Virus record (IMG/VR): IMGVR_UViG_3300020477_000990
Coordinates: 186,001-250,000 of that record
Strand: one strand, 5' to 3'
Length of the DNA stretch: 64,000 bases
Part shown: positions 50,927 to 63,926 of the stretch, piece after piece
Layout of the letters: the number at the start of each line of letters is the position of its first letter
Position numbering within the stretch: the first letter of the stretch is position 1
Translations under genes and position numbers: made by a program
The notes under the pieces: model-generated
The model's input: the letters and a program-made list of their open reading frames with translations, nothing else
Told to the model about the DNA's origin: nothing
The model's database searches: none

Positions 50927-52381
50927 ATGTCTAAAGTTACGAAATTAATTATTAAAGATGAAGTGAATGTAAGATTTGAAGGCCTAGATGTTATAACTAG
51001 ACGTAAAATTTCTGATAAGCTAAAATTCTTTTTACCGTATGCATATCATTTACCTGCTTATAAGTTAGGAAGATGGGATGGTAATATACGATTTTGTGAT
51101 ATTGGAGGAAGAACATATTTAAATTTACTTGATAAAATTTTACCAATAATTGAAGATCAAGAGTATGATGTGCAAATTGAAGATAATAGACAGCCACATG
51201 ATTTTCAATTTCAGTTAATAGATGAAAGTTTACATTTTAGTAAAAATTGGGGAGCAAAACATCCATTGGCAGGACAGCCAATTGTTTTAAGAGATTATCA
51301 AGTAAAAGCAATTAATAAATTTTTACAAGAGCCACAATGTTTACAAGAAATTGCCACAGGTGCAGGAAAAACATTAATTACAGCAACGTTATCTCAATTA
51401 GTGCAACCATATGGAAGATCAATTGTAATTGTTCCAAATAAATCATTAGTATCGCAAACAGAAGAAGATTATAAAACACTTGGATTAGATGTTGGTGTTT
51501 ATTATGGTGAAAGAAAAGAATTTGATAAAAAACATACAATTTGTACTTGGCAAAGTCTTAATGTATTATTAAAGAAAACAAAAAAATATGAAGCTGAAGT
51601 ATCTATAGGAGATTTTTTGCAAGATGTTGTATGTGTTATGGTTGATGAAGTACATCAGGCTAAAGCAGATGTTCTTAAAACATTATTAACAGGACCTTTT
51701 GCTAATGTTCCAATACGTTGGGGACTTACAGGTACAATACCTAAAGAAGATTATGAAATGGCATCATTAAAAGCAAGTTTAGGTGAAGTTATTAGTAAAC
51801 TATCAGCAAGTGAATTACAAGAAAAAGGTGTATTAGCAAAATGTCATGTAAATATTATTCAAACACAAGATACTCAAGCATTTACAAATTATGCAAATGA
51901 GCAAACACATTTAGTTACTAATCATGAACGTTTAGAATTTATTTCAGATTTAATTGATAAAATTAGAGCAGAAGGAAATACATTAATTTTAGTTGATAGA
52001 ATTAAATCAGGACAGTTGCTAGAAGAATTAGTTGTTGGATCGGTATTTGTTCAAGGTAGAACAAAGATGGAAGATAGAGAAGAAGAATATGATAGTATTG
52101 CAACAGAGCAACATAAAGTTATTATTGCTACATATGGTGTAGCGGCAGTAGGAATTAATTTACCAAGAATATTTAATTTGGTATTATTAGAACCAGGTAA
52201 ATCTTTTGTAAGGGTTATACAGTCAATTGGTAGAGGTATACGTAAAGCAGAAGATAAAGATCATGTAGAAATATGGGATATAACGTCGACGTGTAAGTTT
52301 TCAAAACGACATTTGACTACAAGAAAGAAATTTTATAAAGAAGCAAATTATCCTTTTACAATAGAAAAGGTAACAATATGA
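50927..52381 (+). CDS. uvsW: SF2 DNA helicase
   Basis: 'LRDYQ', ATGAGKT, DEVH, 'GLTGT', 'QSIGRG.R'. Confidence 0.92.
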   Translation: MSKVTKLIIKDEVNVRFEGLDVITRRKISDKLKFFLPYAYHLPAYKLGRWDGNIRFCDIGGRTYLNLLDKILPIIEDQEYDVQIEDNRQPHDFQFQLIDESLHFSKNWGAKHPLAGQPIVLRDYQVKAINKFLQEPQCLQEIATGAGKTLITATLSQLVQPYGRSIVIVPNKSLVSQTEEDYKTLGLDVGVYYGERKEFDKKHTICTWQSLNVLLKKTKKYEAEVSIGDFLQDVVCVMVDEVHQAKADVLKTLLTGPFANVPIRWGLTGTIPKEDYEMASLKASLGEVISKLSASELQEKGVLAKCHVNIIQTQDTQAFTNYANEQTHLVTNHERLEFISDLIDKIRAEGNTLILVDRIKSGQLLEELVVGSVFVQGRTKMEDREEEYDSIATEQHKVIIATYGVAAVGINLPRIFNLVLLEPGKSFVRVIQSIGRGIRKAEDKDHVEIWDITSTCKFSKRHLTTRKKFYKEANYPFTIEKVTI

Positions 52382-52878: not shown

Positions 52879-53357
52879 TGAGTGATAAAAAAATTAATTT
52901 AAATCAAATGTTATATAATATTGATATGGCAAATTCTAATTGGTATAATACATTAGAAGATGAAGAAAAGAAAACATTTTCTCCATATACAGCAATGAGA
53001 TTTACTAGCAATGTACAAGGTCAGAAAGCATTTAAAGAGCATTATATTTTAGCTATAAATGATTTTGCTAATAAGCATTTTGGTGTAACGCAAAAGCATC
53101 AAGGAGATTCTACAATGTTTTGGAAATTATTATCACTAGCTGGTATTAAAAAGAAAATGTTTCATCCATGGGTTAAAGCACCAAAAGGAAAAGGTAAAAA
53201 AAACGTAGTTGATAAACTATTATATGAGTGTTATCCAAATGCAAAACGTGATGAAATAGAAGTTTTAAGACAAATTAATAATAAAGATAGTTTAAAAAAG
53301 TTAGCACAAGAGCATGGTTGGACAGATAAGGAAATTAAAGAGCTTGGTAAAAAATAA
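52878..53357 (+). CDS. Clamp-loader small subunit (gp62)-like
   Basis: 'F.PY...R', 'KK.FHPWVK.PK' pattern. Confidence 0.5.
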   Translation: MSDKKINLNQMLYNIDMANSNWYNTLEDEEKKTFSPYTAMRFTSNVQGQKAFKEHYILAINDFANKHFGVTQKHQGDSTMFWKLLSLAGIKKKMFHPWVKAPKGKGKKNVVDKLLYECYPNAKRDEIEVLRQINNKDSLKKLAQEHGWTDKEIKELGKK

Positions 53358-54031
53358 TGTTTAAATGTAAGTATTGTGAATCAGAATTTACTAAAGAACA
53401 AACGTTATCAATTCATATGTGTGAGCCAAAAAGGCGATGGAAACAACAAGATGATCGATTTGTTCAGTTGGCATTTAGAGCTTATCAACATTTTTATAAA
53501 CAAACAATGACTCAAGCAGTAAAAGAAAGAACATATGAAGATTTTTCTAAAAGTAGATATTATACGGCATTTACAAAATTTGGAAGATATTTAGTAGATG
53601 TAAATGTTATAGACCCAACTGATTATGTAAATTATTTAATTAAGAATACAGTTAATATTGATAAATGGCATTTGGATTCTATATATGAACAATATGTTAA
53701 AGATCATGGTAAAAAAGAAGAAGCAAAAAATGCCATAGAACGTGGAATAATAGTTATGAAACGTTGGGAAGATGAAACAGGAGAACCTTGGTATATGTTT
53801 TTAGAAAATATAACACCAAACAGGGCAGTTCATTATATTAGATGTGGAAAAATATCACCTTGGATCTTGTATAATTCCAAAAGTGGTGTTAAACTATTAC
53901 AGTCATTAAATGAAGAACAGGTATCATTAGTAAATGATTACATTGATCCTGATTTTTGGACAGCAAAATTTCAGATGGCAAATAATGATGTTAAGTTTGT
54001 AACTGAAGTATTAGAAAAGGCGGGTATATGA
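53357..54031 (+). CDS. Hypothetical protein with N-terminal zinc finger
   Basis: CKYC-x12-H-x-C. Confidence 0.65.
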   Translation: MFKCKYCESEFTKEQTLSIHMCEPKRRWKQQDDRFVQLAFRAYQHFYKQTMTQAVKERTYEDFSKSRYYTAFTKFGRYLVDVNVIDPTDYVNYLIKNTVNIDKWHLDSIYEQYVKDHGKKEEAKNAIERGIIVMKRWEDETGEPWYMFLENITPNRAVHYIRCGKISPWILYNSKSGVKLLQSLNEEQVSLVNDYIDPDFWTAKFQMANNDVKFVTEVLEKAGI

Positions 54032-54579
54032 GTGAAAAAGATAATATGAAAAAATATCATGGCACACCAGAAATAGTTGCCAAAATAGCAGAAGAAAGTG
54101 ATCATCCATCTGTACGTGAAAAATGGGACGAGCTTAATACATTAGTACATTTGGTGCATAAAGAAAAAGTTATAAAGAAAAAACAAGAAGCATCTGACTT
54201 ATCAAAAACTTGGGATGAAATTGAACATAGAATGAGATTAGTTAAGAATGCAACTAAAGGTTCAGGTATTGATTATGAAGGATACGATGTTGATAAAGGT
54301 TTTTTAGATGGGTATAATCCAAATGTAACGTATTCGTTTGGTAATGATGATGGGACGTATGAATGGCCTGACCCGTCAACACAAATGACTTTAGACTTTC
54401 CTGGAGTAGATATGCAACCAACGGCATCAAGTGCTGTTAATGTAGAAACAGTTGCAGTATCGTTTCCAAAAGAAAAACCACTTAAACTTGATGAAATGGA
54501 AAAACATATTGAAGAAAATACATTGTCATCACCGTTATCAGAATATGAAGCAATTGAAAAATTAAGTAAAGATGATTAA
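54028..54579 (+). CDS. Hypothetical, largely disordered protein with QMTLDF motif
   Basis: Acidic low-complexity C-half; overlaps mini-DnaE start. Confidence 0.55.
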   Translation: MSEKDNMKKYHGTPEIVAKIAEESDHPSVREKWDELNTLVHLVHKEKVIKKKQEASDLSKTWDEIEHRMRLVKNATKGSGIDYEGYDVDKGFLDGYNPNVTYSFGNDDGTYEWPDPSTQMTLDFPGVDMQPTASSAVNVETVAVSFPKEKPLKLDEMEKHIEENTLSSPLSEYEAIEKLSKDD

Positions 54580-55144
54580 AACAGACGTAGATATTGATGT
54601 AAAAGATAGAGATAAAGTTTTAGAAAAGCTAAAACATATACCAGCAAGTATTATACAAAATGGTGAAATTAAAAAGCATAATACTGGAGTATACTTTACT
54701 GACATACCTACACATCCGTTTACTAATTCAGCAAATATAGATTACAAGGAAGCAGAAGACAGAGGTTATTTTAAATTAGATTTTTTAAATGTAGGTGTTT
54801 ATGAAAAAGTAAAAGACGAAAAGCATTTAATTGAATTAATTAATCAAGAACCAAATTGGTCGTTATTAGACCATAAAGAAATTGTAGAGGGGTTATTTCA
54901 TATTCATAATCATTTTGATATTGTTAGTAAATTAAAACCAAAGTCAGTTGAAGAATTGGCGGCAGTTTTGGCAATAATAAGACCAGCTAAGAGACATTTG
55001 CTTAATGTTAGCTGGCCAGAAATTCATTCCAAAGTTTGGGTAAAGCCAGAGGATAACACATATTACTTTAAGAAAAGTCATGCTGTAGGATATGCGTTAG
55101 CCATTTGCGTACAATTAAATCTATTATCTAATGCTATTGTTTAA
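54572..55144 (+). CDS. Miniature DNA polymerase III alpha (DnaE)-like protein
   Basis: DVDID, KHNTGVYF, GYFKLDFLN, FKKSHAVGYA match successive DnaE motifs. Confidence 0.8.
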   Translation: MIKTDVDIDVKDRDKVLEKLKHIPASIIQNGEIKKHNTGVYFTDIPTHPFTNSANIDYKEAEDRGYFKLDFLNVGVYEKVKDEKHLIELINQEPNWSLLDHKEIVEGLFHIHNHFDIVSKLKPKSVEELAAVLAIIRPAKRHLLNVSWPEIHSKVWVKPEDNTYYFKKSHAVGYALAICVQLNLLSNAIV

Positions 55145-55512
55145 TCGTCAGTCTTTTTCACTAATTGAATTTGACGCCTTTTAATACGTTTTCTTATAAT
55201 ATTGTTTAAGCTAGTTACAGGGCCAAATACTAATTTAACATCTTTAGTAGTAAATGTTTTTAAGCAGTTTCCAAATTTAGTAAAATCACCAGCTAAAAAT
55301 ATATTAATAGGAATTACACGGTTTGATTCCCACCACCATACATCACCTAGACGTAAAAATTCACGTTTTTGATCTTCATTATCTAGCACATCATACACGT
55401 ACATACTGGTAACAAAATCATCTTGATTTTGCATAATGCCAACATATTCGTTAGTACCATGCTTTATGCATGATAAGAAAGGAAATTTATCTGTAAGTTC
55501 GTTATAATCCAT
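55141..55512 (-). CDS. Hypothetical protein
   Basis: 123 aa with own promoter. Confidence 0.7.
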   Translation of the reverse strand: MDYNELTDKFPFLSCIKHGTNEYVGIMQNQDDFVTSMYVYDVLDNEDQKREFLRLGDVWWWESNRVIPINIFLAGDFTKFGNCLKTFTTKDVKLVFGPVTSLNNIIRKRIKRRQIQLVKKTDD

Positions 55513-56375: not shown

Positions 56376-57533
56376 ATGGTTAATAGACCATTTTTAAAAA
56401 TAGAAGAAATCAAAAGAGCTGATTTTGAAAGAGTTATTCATGCGACTCAAGAAGATTCAAATTTCAGTTGCTATATTGCAATTCATACTTTAAAAAATGG
56501 TCCAGCTTTTGGCGGCATAAGATTTTGGAAGTATAAAGATTCACAAACACCATATAAAGATGTTTTAAATTTATCAAGAGCAATGACAACTAAATGTGCA
56601 ATTGCTGGAATACAGTTAAGTGGTGGAAAAACAGTTATTGAAGGAGTAGTTCATAGAGAAACAGGTAATCTTGGTGTTGAACCAAAACGAATATTAGGTT
56701 GGTTAGGCGACGCAATTAATTATTTAAAAGGTGATTATTATGCAGGGCTAGATGTTGGCTTTGATTTTGATATGTTAACAAAACTAAGATTACATACAGA
56801 ATATACTGCAACATATTCTGATCCAAATGTTGGTAGTTCATGTACTGCTTATAGTGTTTATAATTCTATGAAAGCCGCTGTTGAATATAAACTTGGTAAG
56901 CAATCACTTGAAGGTGTTAAAGTAGGTATTAAAGGTTTAGGAAAAGTTGGTTTTCAGTTAGCAAATTATTTGTGTGATGATGGTGCTAAATTATATTTTT
57001 CAGAAGTAGATCAAGATAAATTTAATCAGTTTAAAAATGAATCATTACCACCTAGGTGGGTATATAAAGTTGTACCAACATATAATTTGCATAGAGAAGA
57101 TCTTGATGTTTATTCTCCATGTGCATTAGGTAATGATATAAAATTGCATATGGCTGAAGAAATGAATTGTAAAATTATTTGTGGAGCCGCAAATAATCAA
57201 ATTGATTTATCTGAACCAGATAGAACAATAGAAGCATTAACTAAAAAAGATATATTATATATACCAGATAATTTGGCCAATGTTGGCGGGGTATTTAGAT
57301 CTGCTGGAACAATATTAAAATCAAGAGATGAAGAAGAATCATTTAAATTAATAGGAACATCATATCCAAGAACATTGCATATATTAAAAATAGCAGAAAA
57401 TTATAAAGTTACACCTAATGAAATTTGTAAAGAAATGGGTCTAGCGGCATCAGGAGAAGGTCAAAATAGGTTTAAACTTAATGTTGGTGGCCTTGGTGAT
57501 GTTTTTGAAGGCAATAATACCTATAATTATTAA
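56376..57533 (+). CDS. Glu/Leu/Phe/Val dehydrogenase (leucine dehydrogenase-like)
   Basis: 'GPAFGGIR', 'MTTK...AG...GGKTV', 'DVG', GLGKVG, 'SPCALG', 'GAANNQ', 'N.GG'. Confidence 0.9.
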   Translation: MVNRPFLKIEEIKRADFERVIHATQEDSNFSCYIAIHTLKNGPAFGGIRFWKYKDSQTPYKDVLNLSRAMTTKCAIAGIQLSGGKTVIEGVVHRETGNLGVEPKRILGWLGDAINYLKGDYYAGLDVGFDFDMLTKLRLHTEYTATYSDPNVGSSCTAYSVYNSMKAAVEYKLGKQSLEGVKVGIKGLGKVGFQLANYLCDDGAKLYFSEVDQDKFNQFKNESLPPRWVYKVVPTYNLHREDLDVYSPCALGNDIKLHMAEEMNCKIICGAANNQIDLSEPDRTIEALTKKDILYIPDNLANVGGVFRSAGTILKSRDEEESFKLIGTSYPRTLHILKIAENYKVTPNEICKEMGLAASGEGQNRFKLNVGGLGDVFEGNNTYNY

Positions 57534-57562
57534 TTGACTTTTTGTTAATTTTCTTATATTAT
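57534..57562 (+). promoter_or_regulatory. sigma70-like promoter, leaderless
   Basis: TTGACT-17-TATTAT-6-ATG 57569. Confidence 0.7.
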
Positions 57563-57568
57563 ATAAGC

Positions 57569-58558
57569 ATGAATCTTCAAACAACAATATTAACACATTT
57601 ACGTGGAAAAAGAAAAATGACTCCAAGTGGGTGGACAACGGTTAATTGTCCAATGTGTGTGACTAACGGGCAACCAAGGCCAGACACTAGATCACGAGGA
57701 GGCTTCAGTTTTGTTGATGGAATGGTTTACCATTGCTTCAATTGTGGATTCAGTACTAGTTTTAAATCAGGTAGATTATTTGGTAAGAAACTAGTAGGAC
57801 TATTGCGTGGAATTGGTATACCTGATAATGAAGTTAAAAAACTTCAATTGTTAGCAATACGTGAAAAAGAAACTTTCACGCAAGAAGTCCATAAAGAAAA
57901 ACCAAAGGTATCGTGGAGAGAAATACAGTTACCAAAAGGATCTAAACCTTTAATCGAGATTATTAAAAATGATAATCCACCAGATGATGCTGTGTGGGTA
58001 TACAAGCACATTATTGATAGAGGTTTAGATCATTATGGTGATTTTTATTGGAGCAATGATACATATTTAGATTTGAACAGAAGGTTTATCGTACCGTTTT
58101 ATTATCAAGGTAGTACAGTTGGTTATACATCAAGAATTATTGATAATAATCCAGATAAGCCAAAATATTTTACAAATTCACAACCAAATTATATGTATAA
58201 TTTAGATGTATTAAGTAAAAAAAGAAAATATTTAATTGTTGTAGAAGGTGTACTAGATGCTTTAAGTATTGATGGATTAGCAGTATTACATAATAAACTA
58301 AACCAACAGCAAATAGATATTATAAATGAATTTGAAGGTGAAATTATAGTTTGTCCTGATAGAGATAGAGCAGGAACAACATTAATTGATCAAGCAGTTG
58401 AAAATAATTGGGCTGTCAGTTTTCCGCCATGGCATAAAAAAATAAAAGATTGTGCTGATGCTGTAAAAAATTATGGTCAATTGTTTACTATAAAAAGCAT
58501 CATAGAAAATCGAGTAAATAATAAAGTAAAGATTAATGTATTGAGAAAGATCGCATAG
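57569..58558 (+). CDS. DNA primase (gp61/DnaG-like)
   Basis: CPMC...HCFNC zinc domain; TOPRIM 'VVEGVLDAL', 'PDRDRAG'; start moved to 57569. Confidence 0.9.
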   Translation: MNLQTTILTHLRGKRKMTPSGWTTVNCPMCVTNGQPRPDTRSRGGFSFVDGMVYHCFNCGFSTSFKSGRLFGKKLVGLLRGIGIPDNEVKKLQLLAIREKETFTQEVHKEKPKVSWREIQLPKGSKPLIEIIKNDNPPDDAVWVYKHIIDRGLDHYGDFYWSNDTYLDLNRRFIVPFYYQGSTVGYTSRIIDNNPDKPKYFTNSQPNYMYNLDVLSKKRKYLIVVEGVLDALSIDGLAVLHNKLNQQQIDIINEFEGEIIVCPDRDRAGTTLIDQAVENNWAVSFPPWHKKIKDCADAVKNYGQLFTIKSIIENRVNNKVKINVLRKIA

Positions 58559-58571
58559 GAGAATAAAAAGA

Positions 58572-59183
58572 ATGGCGGATTTAGATAGAAAGAAAAAAGA
58601 AGATAAAGCAAGAGGGCCGACCCCATCTCCACAACCATTACAACCAGGAGTAATGATGTGGGAAGCTGGAATAATGTATTTTAGTGAACCATTTGATGCT
58701 AAAACAACGCAACCAGTTATTAACACAATTATCGAAAAGAACTTATTGCCAAATTCACAAAGACCAAATGAACTTACGTTAGTAATTAATTCACCAGGTG
58801 GGCAAGTTCATTCAGCATTTGCTTTAATTGACACGATGAAAGGATCAGCTATTCCTGTAAAAACTGTAGGATTAGGTATGATAGCATCATGTGGATTATT
58901 AACATTTATGAGTGGAACAAAAGGACGTAGAGTGTTAACACCAAATACATCTATATTATCACATCAATATAGTTGGGGATCAGGCGGAAAAGAACACGAA
59001 TTATTTGCAAGAGTACGAGAATTTGAATTAAGCACAAAAAGAATGATTGAACATTACAAAAAATGTACAGGATTATCTGAAAAGAAAATTAGAGAGATAT
59101 TATTACCACCAGAGGACGTTTGGTTATCAGCCAAAGAAGCAGTCAAATATGGTATAGCAGATAAAATTGTAAAAACTTATTAA
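58572..59183 (+). CDS. clpP: ClpP-like serine protease
   Basis: 'INSPGG', 'IASCG' (Ser), 'SHQ' (His), 'EDVWLSA.EAV.YG..D' (Asp). Confidence 0.85.
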   Translation: MADLDRKKKEDKARGPTPSPQPLQPGVMMWEAGIMYFSEPFDAKTTQPVINTIIEKNLLPNSQRPNELTLVINSPGGQVHSAFALIDTMKGSAIPVKTVGLGMIASCGLLTFMSGTKGRRVLTPNTSILSHQYSWGSGGKEHELFARVREFELSTKRMIEHYKKCTGLSEKKIREILLPPEDVWLSAKEAVKYGIADKIVKTY

Positions 59184-59365
59184 TGAGTCCAAGAGAAAAA
59201 ATATTAATAGTAATTTTTTTATTTGTATTAGGAATATCAAACTTGTTTTTAGCTTATCAGATAATTGATTTGCAGGTTACTGTAACTGAATTGTTTGAAA
59301 TGGTTTATAAGCATGATGCTTTTTTACGAATGATAGAAATGTTTAGTCCAGGAATGGAAATTTAA
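59183..59365 (+). CDS. Small single-pass membrane protein
   Basis: N-terminal hydrophobic helix; coupled to both neighbours. Confidence 0.55.
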   Translation: MSPREKILIVIFLFVLGISNLFLAYQIIDLQVTVTELFEMVYKHDAFLRMIEMFSPGMEI

Positions 59366-60012
59366 TGATTGTAGAATTAATAGATAAAATGGGATCTGAT
59401 CTAACGGTAGTAAATGCCGCTAGAGTTAGTTATGGTAAAAACAAAGAAGTATTTGATGCATCAGATGAAAAACTTATTAAGTTTTTAGCTTTGCATAATC
59501 ATTGGTCTCCATTTGCTCATTGTAGCCTACAATTTAGAATTAAAGCACCAATATTTGTTGCTAGGCAGTTAGTTAAGCATCAAGTAGGATTAAGTTGGAA
59601 TGAAATTAGTAGACGCTATGTTGATTTCCCACCTGAATTATATAGCCCAAAAGAATGGAGAGGCAGACCAAAAAATTCTAAACAAGGATCAGATGGCACA
59701 GTTGAATTTAATAAAAATGAACAACATATACTTGATACAACTATGGAACAATGTTTATTAATTTATAATAATATGATAGCAAAAGGTGTAGCACCAGAGC
59801 AGGCTAGAATGGTATTACCACAATCAATGATAACAGAATGGTATTGGACAGGAAGTTTATATGCGTTTGCTAGAGTTTGTGATTTAAGATGTGCAAGTGA
59901 TACACAAGAAGAAACTAGAATAATAGCAAATTCAATTGATAAATTTTGCAATGAGGAATTTCCATATAGTTGGAAATATTTAAGACTTGTAAAACAACAG
60001 GAAAGTGTGTAA
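59365..60012 (+). CDS. thyX: Flavin-dependent thymidylate synthase
   Basis: 'VNAARVSY', 'HWSPF', 'RQLVKH....NEISRRY', 'EQARMVLP', 'TQ.E.R'. Confidence 0.95.
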   Translation: MIVELIDKMGSDLTVVNAARVSYGKNKEVFDASDEKLIKFLALHNHWSPFAHCSLQFRIKAPIFVARQLVKHQVGLSWNEISRRYVDFPPELYSPKEWRGRPKNSKQGSDGTVEFNKNEQHILDTTMEQCLLIYNNMIAKGVAPEQARMVLPQSMITEWYWTGSLYAFARVCDLRCASDTQEETRIIANSIDKFCNEEFPYSWKYLRLVKQQESV

Positions 60013-60021
60013 TATATAACT

Positions 60022-60189
60022 ATGGGTATGGATATTAAAAGAGAATATAGTGCTGATAAACCAGAAGATATAAAAGCAAAAGAAGATGCAAAGAAAAAAA
60101 TGTGGAAAGAGTTTTTTGCAAAAGGTGGAAAAATTGAAAAGATTCCATATAAGGTAACAAAAGATCAATTGAAAAAAGGACAACTGTAA
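60022..60189 (+). CDS. 55-aa protein with SutA RNAP-binding-like motif (not in ORF track)
   Basis: MGMDIKREY...EFFAKGGKIEKIPY; TAATG overlap with helicase; TTGTAA-17-TAATAT-6-ATG. Confidence 0.65.
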   Translation: MGMDIKREYSADKPEDIKAKEDAKKKMWKEFFAKGGKIEKIPYKVTKDQLKKGQL

Positions 60190-61619
60190 TGGCCGCATCT
60201 GACTATAAAAATTATGATGAAAGTTTACAAAAACTTTTTATAGAGTTTTGTGCAACTGATCCTGAGTTATTTGTAAGAGTAAAAAATATAGTTAGGAAAG
60301 AATATTTTTCAGGAAAATTATCTAATGCAGTTAAGTTTATGTTAGAGCATACTGAACAATATAATGCATTACCAACAACTGAACAAATTAAAGCAACCTG
60401 TGATGTAGAATTAACAAAAGTTGAAATAACTGAACAACATAAAAATTGGTTCTTTGATGAGTTTGAAACATTTTGTAGGCACAAGGCATTAGAACACGCA
60501 ATTATAAGTTCAGCTGATTTATTAGAAAAAGGCGATTATGGTCAAGTAGAAGAAAAAATAAAACACGCAGTAAGAATTGGACTTACAAAAGATTTAGGTA
60601 CAGATTACTTTGTTGATCCAAAAGCAAGATTGTTAGCACTTAAAGATAATAATGGCACAATTAGTACAGGATGGACAGCATTAGATCAAAAATTATATGG
60701 TGGATTTAATAAAGGTGAATTGAATATATTTGCAGGACAAAGTGGTGCAGGTAAAAGTTTATTTTTACAAAATCTTGCATTAAATTGGGTAACTTCTGGA
60801 ATGAATGTAGTTTACTTTACTTTTGAGTTAAGTGAAAATTTAAGTTCGATGAGAATTGATTCGATGTCAACAGGTGTAGCATCAAATGAAATATTTAAAA
60901 AGATTGATGATATTGATTTAATGGTACGTATGCAAGGACAAAAAGCAGGTAAGTTTCAATTAAAGTACATGAATAGTGGATGTACAGTAAATGATTTAAG
61001 ATCATATATAAAAGAATATGAAGTACAAACAAATGCAAGACCAGATTGTATTTGTGTTGATTATTTAGATTTGTTAATGCCAATTAGTAAGAGAGTTTCA
61101 CCAAGTGATTTATATATTAAAGACAAATATGTATCTGAAGAATTACGTAATTTAGCAGTAGAAAATCAAATTGTATTAGCAACAGCATCACAATTAAATA
61201 GGTCATCAGTAGAAGAAATTGAATATGATCATTCACATATAGCTGGTGGGTTAAGTAAGGTTCAAACAGCTGATAATGTTATAGGGATTCAAACTAGTAG
61301 AGCTATGCGTGAACGTGGTAGATATTTAATACAATTAATGAAAACTAGGTCAAGTGGTGGTATTGGAAATAAAATATCATTATCATTTAATATAGATACC
61401 TTAAGAATTACTGATCTAACTGAAGAGCAAATAGCAGAAGATGATAATATGACGTCATCATCAATAACTAGTTCTATTAAGAAGCGAACTGCTACAATTA
61501 AGCCAAAAACACCACAAAATCAAGGAGCTCAAGTAGTTCAACAAGTAGAACAAGTAGCAAATTTACGTAGTATGCTTAAGACTAGAAGAACTGCATTAGA
61601 TGACACAGACAAGTTATAA
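60189..61619 (+). CDS. gp41: Replicative DnaB-like helicase
   Basis: GQSGAGKS, 'FTFELSE', 'VDYLDL', 'TASQLNRS', 'QLMKTR'. Confidence 0.93.
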   Translation: MAASDYKNYDESLQKLFIEFCATDPELFVRVKNIVRKEYFSGKLSNAVKFMLEHTEQYNALPTTEQIKATCDVELTKVEITEQHKNWFFDEFETFCRHKALEHAIISSADLLEKGDYGQVEEKIKHAVRIGLTKDLGTDYFVDPKARLLALKDNNGTISTGWTALDQKLYGGFNKGELNIFAGQSGAGKSLFLQNLALNWVTSGMNVVYFTFELSENLSSMRIDSMSTGVASNEIFKKIDDIDLMVRMQGQKAGKFQLKYMNSGCTVNDLRSYIKEYEVQTNARPDCICVDYLDLLMPISKRVSPSDLYIKDKYVSEELRNLAVENQIVLATASQLNRSSVEEIEYDHSHIAGGLSKVQTADNVIGIQTSRAMRERGRYLIQLMKTRSSGGIGNKISLSFNIDTLRITDLTEEQIAEDDNMTSSSITSSIKKRTATIKPKTPQNQGAQVVQQVEQVANLRSMLKTRRTALDDTDKL

Positions 61620-61681: not shown

Positions 61682-61945
61682 GTGAATAAGCGAAATACAA
61701 AATCAATACTTGAAGAAATCAGTAAAGTTATACCAAATAGCAATCGTGAGTCATTAATTGAATCACGAGCTGGGCACGTTATATCTTCAGCTATAAATCT
61801 TATTGATATGCTCCACGAGTCATATGATCAAGAAACTGCCGGCGAGCTAACTAGACGTTTAGTTAATAGTATTAAAAGTAGCGACCCTGCTAAATTTGAA
61901 CGTGGAATTAGAAGGGTTTTACAGAATAAAAATGAAGATAAATGA
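61682..61945 (+). CDS. Hypothetical helical protein
   Basis: GTG start, GGAG SD, TAAATA at 61649. Confidence 0.65.
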   Translation: MNKRNTKSILEEISKVIPNSNRESLIESRAGHVISSAINLIDMLHESYDQETAGELTRRLVNSIKSSDPAKFERGIRRVLQNKNEDK

Positions 61946-63926
61946 TATTAAAATCGATGAAAATATCAACACACATTTAACCCATTTAGAAGATTTAAGT
62001 CTTTTTAATGGTAAAAAAGGTGCGGTGCAGGCACTTGGTTTTTTAACAGGATTATCTAATATTGTAAAAGGGAATTCATCAAAAAAATTTAATATTACTA
62101 CAAAATGGGATGGGTCTCCAGCAATTGTTTGTGGAACAGATCCTAAAGATGGTAAATTTTTTATTGGCACAAAAGGTGTTTTTAACAAAAACCCAAAATT
62201 AAATAAGTCAATGAAAGATGTATCAGTAAATCATGCTGATACAGTTGCTAAAGGTGAAACTACAGATAAAAGTGAGTTAAGAGGCAAATTAAGACAAGCA
62301 TTAAAATATTTAGAAAAATTAAATATTAAAGGTGTATTACAAGGTGATTTAATGTTTACACAAGGTGACCTTCAAGAAAAGAATTGCCAAGGTGAAGCTT
62401 GTATAACGTTTCAACCAAATGAAATAGTTTATGCTGTCCCATCAAATAGTGAATTAGCACAAAGAATTAAAAGAGCTAAAGTTGGAATAGTATTTCATAC
62501 ATCATATGAAGGTGATAGTTTAGATAATATGACAGCGTCATTTAGAGTTGATTTATCTAATTTAACACCTACACCAGATGTTTGGTTTGATGATGCATAT
62601 ATTAAAGACTATTCTGGTATGGCAACAATGACAGCACAAGAGTCAGCGGCAGTAGATTCTGGAATAGCTCAAATAAAAAGTAGTTTGCAATCAGTAGGAA
62701 ATGCATTTGAATTTTTAGATGGTTCTGAAGCTGGTAATGATTTAAAGATTAATATTGCGGCTAATATTAATTCTAATATTAAGCAAAATGTAATACAACA
62801 AAATCCTGAAACATTTTTTAATCAATTTGTTGAGGATTATAAGAAAAGAGCAGAAGCTAAAATAGAGCAATTAAAGACGGGTAGAGAGGGTGTTGCAGGA
62901 CAACGTCGCTTAAATGCCCTACAAATTGGCTTAAATTACTTAAATACTAATAAGAATAATATGTTGAGTTTTTACTCTATATGGCTTAAATTAGGTGCTA
63001 TGAAGAACATATTATATAAAAAATTATCAAGTATTAAAGCAATTGATAGTTTTGAACAAAATGGAGATGAATTAAAAGTAAGAGATCCAGAAGGTTTTGT
63101 TGCTGTTGACCATATAGGAAATGCAATAAAAGTTGTGGATAGATTAGATTTTAGTAGGAAAAATTTTATGAAAAAAGAAGGTATAGAATTAGATTTAGTT
63201 ACACAATTGCTTACTGAAGCAAGAATGTTTAAATCAAGACAAGGTGTATCAAAGTTTTCAGCACGTGAAATAGCTGATATGGCTTTTGCACATTGTATCG
63301 CTTTGCAAGTAATGAATCGTGAATTCAAGTACACATCAGTTGCAAAAAGTTATGCATCAAGAACTTCAAGTTATGGTAACTATGATTATTTTAGATCAAA
63401 TGGTACTGATTTATATGTAATGTTACACGCCTTATTTGGTAAAGGTTCTATTATTAAATTTGATGATGAAAAAAATAGTAAAATTTTATTAAGCAGAATG
63501 AAAAGTGATATAATGCCGTTTAGAGAATTTTTAAGTCATATTGGATCTTCAGGATCAAATACTGATACTGAACAACGTATGTTAATGAGATTGCAAGGAG
63601 CATTGTATATTTCAAACAGTAAGTTACGTTCTATGAAACGTTTAGCAGGTGATTGGGAAAATTTAAAAACACGAGAAAAAAGAACATTAGTATCTAGCTT
63701 ATTAACTTATTTTAGATCAAATTCACCTATGTCATCGCTTACAACTTATATTCAAAGATTAGCACGTGAACGTGATTTTGGTGATGATAAGCAAAAAGTT
63801 AAAACATCAAAAGCAATGGCAGTTGGTGCGGCATTGGCAGGTGCATATTTAGGTTATAAACTTGGTCGTGGTAAAACACCAAGCTATGCAGATAAAAAAT
63901 TTAATTTTAAAAAGGATAAAAAATAA
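61932..63926 (+). CDS. Covalent nucleotidyltransferase/RNA-ligase-like protein (DUF6267-like) with extra C-terminal domain
   Basis: KWDG (motif I, Lys58), 'LQGDL', 'EGFV', 'KVVDR'; start moved to ATG 61932. Confidence 0.65.
   Translation: MKINDIKIDENINTHLTHLEDLSLFNGKKGAVQALGFLTGLSNIVKGNSSKKFNITTKWDGSPAIVCGTDPKDGKFFIGTKGVFNKNPKLNKSMKDVSVNHADTVAKGETTDKSELRGKLRQALKYLEKLNIKGVLQGDLMFTQGDLQEKNCQGEACITFQPNEIVYAVPSNSELAQRIKRAKVGIVFHTSYEGDSLDNMTASFRVDLSNLTPTPDVWFDDAYIKDYSGMATMTAQESAAVDSGIAQIKSSLQSVGNAFEFLDGSEAGNDLKINIAANINSNIKQNVIQQNPETFFNQFVEDYKKRAEAKIEQLKTGREGVAGQRRLNALQIGLNYLNTNKNNMLSFYSIWLKLGAMKNILYKKLSSIKAIDSFEQNGDELKVRDPEGFVAVDHIGNAIKVVDRLDFSRKNFMKKEGIELDLVTQLLTEARMFKSRQGVSKFSAREIADMAFAHCIALQVMNREFKYTSVAKSYASRTSSYGNYDYFRSNGTDLYVMLHALFGKGSIIKFDDEKNSKILLSRMKSDIMPFREFLSHIGSSGSNTDTEQRMLMRLQGALYISNSKLRSMKRLAGDWENLKTREKRTLVSSLLTYFRSNSPMSSLTTYIQRLARERDFGDDKQKVKTSKAMAVGAALAGAYLGYKLGRGKTPSYADKKFNFKKDKK

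What the first reader, a model, noticed from the sequence alone, without database searches (positions are those of the whole stretch)
54572..55144. A 190-aa 'mini-DnaE' retaining all three catalytic aspartates
Seen: DVDID at the N-terminus, then KHNTGVYF, GYFKLDFLN and YFKKSHAVGYA, in the same order as DnaE PDFDVDF, HAAGVVI, GLVKFDFLG and FNKSHSAAY. Established: E. coli DnaE (~1160 aa) uses D401/D403/D555. Here the PHP, most of the thumb/fingers, HhH and OB domains are missing. Start and stop are clean and coupled to neighbours, with no frameshifted continuation, so this does not look like a decayed fragment. Inference: a stand-alone minimal C-family nucleotidyltransferase (primer extension, repair or base/terminal modification) that may rely on the adjacent Zn-finger and gp62-like ORFs as partner subunits.
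Basis: partly seen in the sequence, partly recalled or inferred. Interest (0 to 1): 0.7.

Follow-up and report, generated by a model that had tools for sequence, protein, structure and literature searches.

The report
Half of a split mini-polymerase
The 190-aa ORF is real and conserved, but it is only the metal-binding half of a two-gene "minimal DNA polymerase III alpha" already described in jumbo phages in 2021; the nucleotide-binding half lies 230 kb away in the same 328-kb phage genome.

Summary
The ORF (window 54572-55144, +) exists as described. It is a true, strongly conserved relative of the Pol III alpha catalytic core. All 190 residues superpose on E. coli alpha 398-780 (Z 9.2), D5/D7/D70 are invariant in the 63-sequence alignment, and median dN/dS is 0.12. 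It is not stand-alone.

The window lies in a complete 328-kb jumbo phage. That genome also encodes a 179-aa protein ("A", genome 9786-10325). A carries the invariant GVGRGSS triphosphate loop and superposes on alpha 278-396, ending where the flagged ORF ("B") begins.

- A and B co-occur in about 90 of 96 sequenced jumbo phages, always far apart.
- One metagenomic protein (P0298, 375 aa) has them fused in one chain.
- A complex prediction scores 0.89 against 0.00 for controls.
- The genome has a 907-aa family-B polymerase and no detectable PHP or HhH domain.

Iyer et al. 2021 (PMC7824862) describe exactly this split minimal Pol III alpha for "group 2.2" jumbo phages. I found no biochemistry on it. 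The adjacent Zn-finger ORF is a conserved neighbour of unknown function, and the "gp62-like" label has no support.

Verdict: a correct observation of an already published system.

The parts
54572..55144 (+). Half B: the C-terminal (Mg2+-binding and finger) unit of the split minimal Pol III alpha, 190 aa
   Evidence: phrog_11778 matches end to end at E 6e-75. The fold superposes on E. coli alpha 398-780 at Z 9.2. pLDDT is 96.5. Median dN/dS is 0.12.
54584..54598 (+). DVDID strand (D5, D7, D9), corresponding to E. coli D401/D403/D405; D401 and D403 are catalytic metal ligands
   Evidence: The profile alignment to Taq 'PDIDTDF' is. D5 and D7 are invariant and D9 is at least 90% conserved. This strand touches the GRGS loop of half A in the predicted complex.
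54773..54781 (+). K68-L-D70, corresponding to E. coli K553/D555 (third catalytic Asp and a phosphate-binding Lys)
   Evidence: K68 and D70 are invariant. They align to Taq 'GLLKMDFLG'.
54977..54991 (+). IRPAK motif (R137, P138, K140), corresponding to the Pol III alpha finger 'RPGP' segment
   Evidence: P138 is invariant; R137 and K140 are at least 90% conserved. The motif aligns to Taq 698-703.
55067..55096 (+). FKKSHAVGYA motif (K167, H170), corresponding to Pol III alpha 'FNKSHAAAY'
   Evidence: K167, H170 and A175 are at least 90% conserved. The motif aligns to Taq 813-824. It contacts half A residues 160-171 in the predicted complex.
53357..54031 (+). Conserved upstream neighbour: a 224-aa protein with an N-terminal C2H2-like Zn finger; function unknown
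   Evidence: phrog_11058 at E 4e-66. Syntenic with B in PA5oct, Atu_ph07, 121Q and 15 metagenomic viral loci. The Atlas holds only phage C2H2 clusters for it.
54028..54579 (+). Variable insert between the Zn-finger ORF and B (183 aa, acidic); not a conserved partner
   Evidence: No PHROG, Pfam or NCBIfam family. Found only in the closest relatives at 34-36% identity, where flanking genes are 66-87% identical. Absent in PA5oct.
55141..55512 (-). Convergent 123-aa ORF that overlaps B's stop; a conserved neighbour
   Evidence: phrog_11637 at E 9e-36. It follows B in 3 isolates and 14 of 15 metagenomic loci, and a homologue follows the fused gene too (E 1e-7).
50927..52381 (+). UvsW-type helicase; start of the conserved replication block that holds B
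   Evidence: ResIII, Helicase_C and UvsW_N domains. Synteny.
57542..58558 (+). Toprim DNA primase (T4 gp61-like); conserved downstream member of the block
   Evidence: phrog_47 at E 1e-30 and Toprim_2. Synteny.
60189..61619 (+). DnaB/gp41-like replicative helicase
   Evidence: DnaB_C at E 1e-20.

Best explanation
**Identity.** The ORF is the C-terminal unit (B) of a two-gene, non-covalently assembled minimal C-family polymerase core. It belongs to a marine 'group 2.2' (Rak2/PA5oct/121Q-like) jumbo phage.

**What each half supplies.**
- B supplies the beta-strands carrying the three metal-binding aspartates (D5, D7, D70), the phosphate-binding K68, and a shortened finger region.
- Half A supplies the preceding palm helices and the GRGS triphosphate-binding loop. 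A is 179 aa and lies outside the window, at genome 9786-10325, next to the clamp-loader gene.
- The break falls inside the Pol-beta-like nucleotidyltransferase fold, between E. coli alpha residues 396 and 398. Neither half can therefore form an active site alone.

**What is shown.** Homology, exact complementarity of the halves, co-occurrence, the existence of a natural fusion, purifying selection, and a confidently predicted interface.

**What is inferred.**
- A and B form a heterodimer that polymerises nucleotides.
- The heterodimer acts as an accessory DNA polymerase in phage replication or repair, beside the T4-type family-B polymerase.
- Because it has no thumb, clamp-binding tail, PHP or OB domain, it should have low processivity on its own.
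For: **Family and complementary halves.**
- B is a full-length member of phrog_11778 (E 6e-75).
- A matches phrog_11127 (E 1e-48) and PF07733 at 43.9 bits against a 23.9-bit cut-off.
- By structure, A 78-179 corresponds to E. coli alpha 278-396 (Z 9-10.7) and B 1-190 to 398-780 (Z 9.2). By sequence, A 103-179 aligns to alpha 316-392 without gaps.
- GVGRGSS is invariant in A. D5, D7, K68 and D70 are invariant in B.

**Co-occurrence and fusion.**
- With the fused protein as query, 96 phage records give 186 places, and none covers 80% or more of the query in one place. Separations range from 15 to 182 kb.
- A natural single-chain form exists: P0298, 375 aa. Its residues 14-181 match A (36% identity, E 8e-27) and 190-373 match B. 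DnaE models align straight across the junction.

**Predicted complex.** ipSAE is 0.89 against a best control of 0.00. The mark was reached by 58 of 80 solved complexes and 2 of 110 mismatched pairs. The three runs agree in at least 92% of contacts and the partner's pLDDT is 91. The GRGS loop of A (141-151) packs on the Asp strand of B (1-11).

**Selection and context.**
- Median dN/dS for B is 0.12.
- The genome has a 907-aa family-B polymerase and no PHP or HhH match.
- Both halves sit in conserved replication blocks: B in UvsW…B…primase…helicase, and A in A–ORF–Cpn10–gp44 clamp loader.

**Literature.** Iyer et al. 2021 (PMC7824862) reached the same architecture independently.
Against: - There is no biochemical or genetic evidence for any member of the family. 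I found none in the literature.
- The complex score may partly reflect the model's memory of the intact Pol III alpha palm. It shows likeness to one fold, not measured binding.
- The enzyme lacks the thumb and the middle fingers (Taq 709-799). I recall from my own knowledge, not checked here, that this segment holds arginines that contact the incoming dNTP. Templated DNA synthesis is therefore not assured.
- The two genes lie in different transcription units 230 kb apart, and co-expression is not shown. The metatranscriptome fragments cannot exclude DNA carry-over.
- No DnaQ-type exonuclease was found in this genome.
Confidence: 0.85

Rival explanations
1. The A+B heterodimer is catalytically active but is not a templated DNA polymerase. 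It would be some other Pol-beta-fold nucleotidyltransferase, for example one doing non-templated 3' tailing, ribonucleotide or primer-like synthesis, nucleotide-signal synthesis, or DNA-end modification.
For: - The thumb is absent and the fingers are cut by roughly half. B covers E. coli 398-780 in only 190 residues.
- There is no clamp-binding, HhH or PHP module.
- The genome already has a complete family-B replicase.
- Pol-beta-fold enzymes as a class carry out many non-replicative transfers (general knowledge).
Against: - The retained finger motifs (RPxK, FKKSHAxxYA) are specific to C-family polymerases and nearly invariant.
- Both genes sit in replication modules.
- Iyer et al. read the C-terminal unit as binding template DNA.
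Confidence: 0.2
2. One reading: B alone is a stand-alone minimal nucleotidyltransferase that uses the adjacent Zn-finger and 'gp62-like' ORFs as partner subunits.
For: - B holds all three catalytic aspartates.
- The Zn-finger ORF, the 159-aa ORF and the convergent 123-aa ORF are conserved neighbours in 18 loci.
Against: - B lacks the GS triphosphate loop and the first half of the palm. These lie on A, which co-occurs with B everywhere and is fused to it in P0298.
- The 183-aa ORF directly upstream is a non-conserved insert.
- No gp62 likeness appears in any library.
- Gene order is conserved across the whole replication block, so adjacency is not specific to B.
Confidence: 0.04
3. A decayed fragment or pseudogene left over from a once full-length phage DnaE.
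For: - It is about one sixth the length of DnaE.
- The CBB paper called the A-type protein 'truncated'.
Against: - Median dN/dS is 0.12.
- The catalytic residues are invariant across 63 homologues of 30-53% identity.
- There are at least 7,900 metagenomic homologues of the same length and 437 clusters at 50% identity.
- The ORF has a clean start and stop, and the model's pLDDT is 96.5.
Confidence: 0.01
4. An intein-mediated trans-spliced DnaE, as in cyanobacteria.
For: DnaE is the classic host of split inteins (general knowledge; one search lists that literature).
Against: - A ends at …EFLKDK and B starts at MIKTDVDID.
- A's C-terminal part, right up to its last residue, and all of B are accounted for by Pol III alpha 278-396 and 398-780.
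- That leaves no room at the junction for an N-intein of about 100 aa or a C-intein of about 35 aa.
- The natural fusion has only a 9-residue linker.
Confidence: 0.01

Closest known systems
Split minimal DNA polymerase III alpha of group 2.2 jumbo phages (Iyer, Anantharaman, Krishnan, Burroughs & Aravind 2021, Viruses 13:63; PHROG families 11778 and 11127)
   Same: Everything that could be tested matches:
- a C-terminal Mg2+/template unit and an N-terminal NTP-binding unit on distant genes;
- no other Pol III domains in the genome;
- a family-B polymerase and a T4-like replisome in the same jumbo genome.

The closest isolates by protein identity are Phosso, PA5oct and Atu_ph07 (53-56%).
   Different: - This copy is from an uncultivated marine phage of about 31% GC, with 230 kb between the halves.
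- I also found a rare natural single-chain (fused) form in a metagenome. The passages of the paper that I read do not mention such a form.
Bacterial DnaE / Pol III alpha (E. coli 2HNH, Taq 2HPI/3E0D) and PolC
   Same: - The Pol-beta-like palm, with a GS loop, DxD plus a third Asp, and the K553-equivalent lysine.
- The finger motifs RPGP and FNKSHAAAY.
- A+B are colinear with alpha 278-780.
   Different: - The total is about 370 aa against about 1160 aa.
- The PHP and HhH domains are absent, and no beta-clamp-binding, OB or tau-binding region is accounted for.
- The thumb (E. coli about 433-510) and about half of the fingers are deleted.
- The polypeptide is broken inside the palm.
- It scores far below the TIGR00594 cut-off (17.6 against 434 bits).
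Intein-split DnaE of cyanobacteria (Ssp/Npu DnaE)
   Same: A C-family polymerase encoded by two distant genes.
   Different: - There the full-length enzyme is restored by protein trans-splicing, at a different site in the fingers.
- Here there is no intein, and the halves must stay non-covalently bound.
Other split phage polymerases (intein-split PolB of MIJ3/PA5oct; chimallivirus split PolB with a clamp-derived subunit, bioRxiv 2026)
   Same: Jumbo-phage polymerases assembled from separate polypeptides.
   Different: Those are family-B enzymes, with unrelated folds and unrelated split points.

Membership tests
Split minimal Pol III alpha of group 2.2 jumbo phages, C-terminal unit (phrog_11778) | End-to-end sequence match to the family | tested here: met
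   phrog_11778 at E 6.2e-75, residues 3-189 against profile positions 6-195 of 197. 96 jumbo-phage records match in tblastn.
Split minimal Pol III alpha of group 2.2 jumbo phages, C-terminal unit (phrog_11778) | A separate N-terminal NTP-binding unit encoded at a distant locus of the same genome | tested here: met
   The unit lies at genome 9777-10325, with PF07733 at E 3e-11 and phrog_11127 at E 1e-48. It is 230 kb from B.
Split minimal Pol III alpha of group 2.2 jumbo phages, C-terminal unit (phrog_11778) | The Mg2+-chelating aspartates are retained | tested here: met
   D5, D7 and D70 are invariant in 63 homologues and map to E. coli D401/D403/D555.
Split minimal Pol III alpha of group 2.2 jumbo phages, C-terminal unit (phrog_11778) | The genome lacks other Pol III domains and has a family-B polymerase and a T4-like replisome | tested here: met
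   No PHP or HHH_6 match. PolB is 907 aa. UvsW, primase, a DnaB-like helicase and a gp44 clamp loader are present.
Split minimal Pol III alpha of group 2.2 jumbo phages, C-terminal unit (phrog_11778) | The two units reconstitute one enzyme | tested here: inconclusive
   The prediction supports binding: ipSAE 0.89 against a best control of 0.00. The mark was reached by 58 of 80 solved complexes and 2 of 110 mismatched pairs; the runs agree in at least 92% of contacts; the partner's pLDDT is 91. A natural fusion also exists. No experiment has been done.
Bacterial DnaE / Pol III alpha (TIGR00594, full-length replicase) | N-terminal PHP domain | tested here: not met
   No PF02811 match in the whole genome at E up to 10.
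Bacterial DnaE / Pol III alpha (TIGR00594, full-length replicase) | Complete palm-thumb-fingers on one polypeptide | tested here: not met
   The palm is divided between two proteins. The thumb and the middle fingers are skipped in the alignments: the matched blocks are Taq 460-521, 601-708 and 800-824.
Bacterial DnaE / Pol III alpha (TIGR00594, full-length replicase) | HhH, OB and clamp-binding C-terminal region | tested here: not met
   No HHH_6 match in the genome. B ends at the equivalent of E. coli residue 780. OB and clamp-binding regions were not searched for separately.
Bacterial DnaE / Pol III alpha (TIGR00594, full-length replicase) | Score above the curated family cut-off | tested here: not met
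   TIGR00594 scores 17.6 bits for B and 34 bits for A against a cut-off of 434.
Intein-split DnaE | Intein halves flanking the break | tested here: not met
   The residues of both proteins at the junction are accounted for by Pol III alpha. The linker in the natural fusion is 9 residues.

The most novel reading that the evidence does not exclude
The thumb-less A+B heterodimer would not be a second replicase. It would be a specialised enzyme with a role that no characterised phage polymerase fills. One possibility is a Pol-alpha-like primer extender that hands over to the family-B polymerase. Another is a non-templated or modified-nucleotide transferase. In either case the split would serve to regulate activity through separate expression of the two halves. 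The rare single-chain form (P0298) would then give a ready-made, minimal C-family catalytic core of about 43 kDa for biochemistry and for testing ideas on the origin of Pol III.
Probability: 0.2. Interest if true: 0.65.

Novelty: already known. Interest (0 to 1): 0.3.

Why it matters
As a discovery it adds little. The family is in PHROGs, it is annotated as "DNA polymerase III alpha" in many GenBank phage records, and its split minimal architecture was published in 2021.

It still matters as an open biochemical problem.
- It is the smallest known C-family catalytic core, and it is broken inside the active-site fold.
- It is universal in a large clade of jumbo phages, and its relatives are very numerous in ocean metagenomes (at least 7,900 for each half).
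- It is under strong purifying selection.
- No activity, partner or phenotype has been reported for it.

Two points here may help whoever takes it up. A natural fused version exists. The break maps exactly to E. coli residues 396/398.

Tried and rejected
- **megablast of the region against phage records:** no match. The genome is an uncultivated IMG/VR record.
- **Single-sequence PDB search with B:** only noise. A profile was needed.
- **DnaQ/RNase_T exonuclease in this genome:** none found, unlike the epsilon-like genes reported in Atu_ph07 and CBB.
- **Search for A on five B-bearing viral contigs:** nothing found. Those contigs are only 8-29% complete, so this says only that A is not nearby.
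- **PA5oct transcriptome paper:** no gene-level values in the text and no supplements held.
- **Marine metatranscriptomes:** identical short contigs overlap parts of both A and B in run X1. Coverage is patchy and DNA carry-over cannot be excluded, so I do not count this as expression evidence.
- **First attempts at the complex and the fold:** I re-ran them without those rows.
- **Joint alignment to fold the fused protein (A5):** wrong, because MAFFT laid the A homologues on the B half. I discarded it, and the fused protein was not folded.
- **Intein hypothesis, pseudogene hypothesis and 'gp62-like neighbour':** considered and rejected (see the rival explanations).
- **Papers on 'split DNA polymerase' in MIJ3 and chimalliviruses:** these concern family-B enzymes, not this one.

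Full report
**1. The observation.** The window is bases 186001-250000 of a complete 328,149-bp virus record with direct terminal repeats. The window is about 29-39% GC, and about 30% around the ORF.

An ORF of 190 aa lies at 54572-55144 on the + strand. Its ATG overlaps the stop of the upstream ORF, and its end overlaps a convergent 123-aa ORF by 4 nt.

**2. Is it DnaE-like beyond chance? Yes.**
- Pfam gives only a sub-threshold finger hit.
- PHROGs gives an end-to-end match to phrog_11778 'DNA polymerase' (E 6e-75) and a local match to the 1190-position DnaE-type phrog_405 (E 1e-7).
- A profile of 67 homologues hits Taq and E. coli Pol III alpha structures (E 7e-6 to 5e-5) in three colinear blocks: Taq 460-521, 601-708 and 800-824.
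- The AlphaFold model is very confident (pLDDT 96.5).
- Its top 16 Foldseek PDB matches are all C-family polymerases. BFVD likewise returns only larger phage DnaE-type proteins.
- VIA-align puts all 190 residues on E. coli alpha 398-780 and Taq 459-837 (Z 9.2-9.5, 184-188 residues aligned, rmsd 3.7 Å). The first unrelated fold scores Z 4.1.
- D5/D7/D9 correspond to E. coli D401/D403/D405, and K68/D70 to K553/D555.

**3. It is not decayed.**
- In 63 homologues at 30-53% identity, D5, D7, G39, K68, D70 and P138 are invariant. D9, H36, R137, K140, K167 and H170 are at least 90% conserved.
- Nei-Gojobori dN/dS over 116 pairs of related viral loci with dS 0.05-1.5 has a median of 0.12.
- At least 7,977 metagenomic relatives of the same length were found, many from Tara Oceans. 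There are 437 clusters at 50% identity.

**4. It is not stand-alone.** A search of the phage's own genome with PF07733 found a second DnaE piece at C1:10086-10319.
- It lies in an ORF at L001:1192-1740, genome 9777-10325.
- The ORF is 182 aa from a TTG start. Homologues show that the ATG three codons downstream is the likely start, giving 179 aa.
- This 'half A' passes the Pfam cut-off (43.9 against 23.9 bits) and belongs to phrog_11127.
- Residues 103-179 align without gaps to E. coli alpha 316-392.
- Its model superposes on alpha 278-396 (Z 9-10.7).
- It carries an invariant GVGRGSS loop, the counterpart of the GPGRGSG segment of E. coli alpha (alignment). Iyer et al. call this unit the NTP-binding one.
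- A therefore stops at alpha residue 396 and B starts at 398. The break is inside the Pol-beta-like catalytic fold, with the NTP loop on one protein and the metal ligands on the other.
- The first ~77 residues of A have no counterpart in Pol III alpha by structure.

**5. Evidence that the halves work together.**
- *Co-occurrence.* With the fused protein as query, all 96 matching phage records give 186 places, about two per record, and none covers 80% or more of the query in one place. Single-half searches found 96 and 87 records of the same taxa. Separations are 15 kb in XacN1, 31 kb in 121Q, 43 kb in PA5oct and 182 kb in Atu_ph07.
- *A natural single-chain form.* P0298 (375 aa) has an A-like part at residues 14-181 (36% identity, E 8e-27), a 9-residue linker, and a B-like part at 190-373. 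DnaE models align straight through its junction. It is followed by a homologue of the convergent ORF that follows B (E 1e-7). It is rare: one of the 150 best clusters.
- *Complex prediction.* ipSAE is 0.89 against a best control of 0.00. The mark was reached by 58 of 80 solved complexes and 2 of 110 mismatched pairs. The runs agree in at least 92% of contacts and the partner's pLDDT is 91. My own alignments were used, so the calibration holds only roughly, and a solved intact palm may be remembered by the model. About 190 contacts are predicted. A 141-151 (the GRGS loop) lies on B 1-11 (the Asp strand), and A 160-171 on B 167-177.
- *A folded alone.* It is less confident (pLDDT 79.7), and the GRGS loop falls below 50.

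**6. Genomic context.** The genome has a 907-aa family-B polymerase. It has no PHP, HHH_6 or RNase_T match.
- B sits in a block that is conserved in PA5oct, Atu_ph07, 121Q and 15 metagenomic loci.
- The block order is UvsW helicase, 166-aa ORF, 159-aa ORF, 224-aa Zn-finger ORF, a variable insert, B, a convergent 123-aa ORF, a structural protein, a variable GDH-like gene, and primase.
- In the window, ClpP, ThyX and a DnaB-like helicase follow.
- A sits in its own conserved block: A, a small ORF, Cpn10-like, and a gp44-type clamp loader.
- The Zn-finger ORF is a phage-only C2H2 family of unknown function.
- The 183-aa ORF just upstream of B is a poorly conserved insert.
- No library supports a gp62 likeness for any neighbour.

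**7. Comparison with what is known.** Iyer et al. 2021 (PMC7824862) describe this system. [quoted passage not shown] They suggest a role in synthesis of one strand or in repair.
- Earlier genome papers noted only the A-type protein, as a 'truncated' Pol III alpha (CBB; Atu_ph07).
- A marine jumbo-phage survey noted PF07733 as a marker of one phage cluster.
- I found no experimental work.
- The 'split DNA polymerase' papers on MIJ3 and chimalliviruses concern family-B enzymes.

**8. Mechanism and confidence.** The best-supported reading is that A and B co-fold into a heterodimeric core of about 42 kDa. Its active site is composite: the GS loop from A, and the Asp triad and Lys from B.
- Confidence is about 0.85-0.9 that B is the C-terminal half of this split enzyme.
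- Confidence is about 0.55 that it is a templated DNA polymerase acting in replication or repair.
- About 0.2 goes to some other nucleotidyl transfer, because the thumb and half of the fingers are missing.
- Stand-alone activity of B, decay, and intein splicing are each very unlikely.

**9. Verdict.** It is, however, an orthologue of an already published and database-annotated system.

Two minor additions come from this work. The break maps exactly to E. coli residues 396/398. A rare natural fused form exists.

Noticed in passing
L010:1066-2193 (ENA metagenome scaffold, 2.4 kb): A natural single-chain (fused A+B) mini-Pol III alpha of 375 aa (P0298). It is the only one among the 150 best clusters, and none is found in 96 sequenced phages. 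The contig is short, so the host phage is unknown, as is whether fusion or split came first.
   Followed up: partly
window 56376-57533 (+): A Glu/Leu/Phe/Val-dehydrogenase-like gene (385 aa; ELFV_dehydrog at E 2e-15) lies between the structural gene and the primase. It is present in the closest marine relatives (56-57% identity) and absent at this position in PA5oct, Atu_ph07 and 121Q. It may be an auxiliary metabolic gene.
   Followed up: partly
window 54028-54579 (+): An acidic 183-aa ORF without any family lies between the Zn-finger ORF and B. It is only 34-36% identical in relatives whose flanking genes are 66-87% identical, so it is a fast-evolving insert.
   Followed up: partly
L001:1192-1740 (genome 9777-10325), residues 1-77 of half A: The N-terminal ~77 residues of A have no structural counterpart in Pol III alpha. 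They hold invariant residues (N47, W81-x-x-P84 nearby) and are predicted to touch B (residues 7-36 and 70-83). This may be a phage-specific clasp that holds the halves together.
   Followed up: partly
L066:9945-12633 (genome about 13.9-16.6 kb): GTP cyclohydrolase I, a cytidylyltransferase-like protein and an FkbM-type methyltransferase are clustered a few kb downstream of half A, with a weak glycosyltransferase hit upstream. This may be a nucleotide, sugar or DNA-modification module.
   Followed up: no
L066:1099-2598 and L066:13554-14084: The phage encodes an M17 leucyl aminopeptidase (E 6e-120) and a peroxiredoxin (Redoxin, E 2e-26).
   Followed up: no
window 58572-59183, 59365-60012, 61896-63926: A ClpP-like protease, ThyX thymidylate synthase and a 676-aa DUF6267 protein (E 8e-96) lie downstream of the primase.
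   Followed up: no
L002 (genome 34406-35629 within a 907-aa open frame): The family-B polymerase is one uninterrupted ORF here. In the PA5oct-like phage MIJ3 it is reported as split by an intein.
   Followed up: no
BFVD entry A0A249Y020 (rank 15): An unnamed 374-aa viral protein matches the B model (probability 1.00, 144 columns). Its length equals that of the fused form, so it may be another single-chain mini-Pol III.
   Followed up: no
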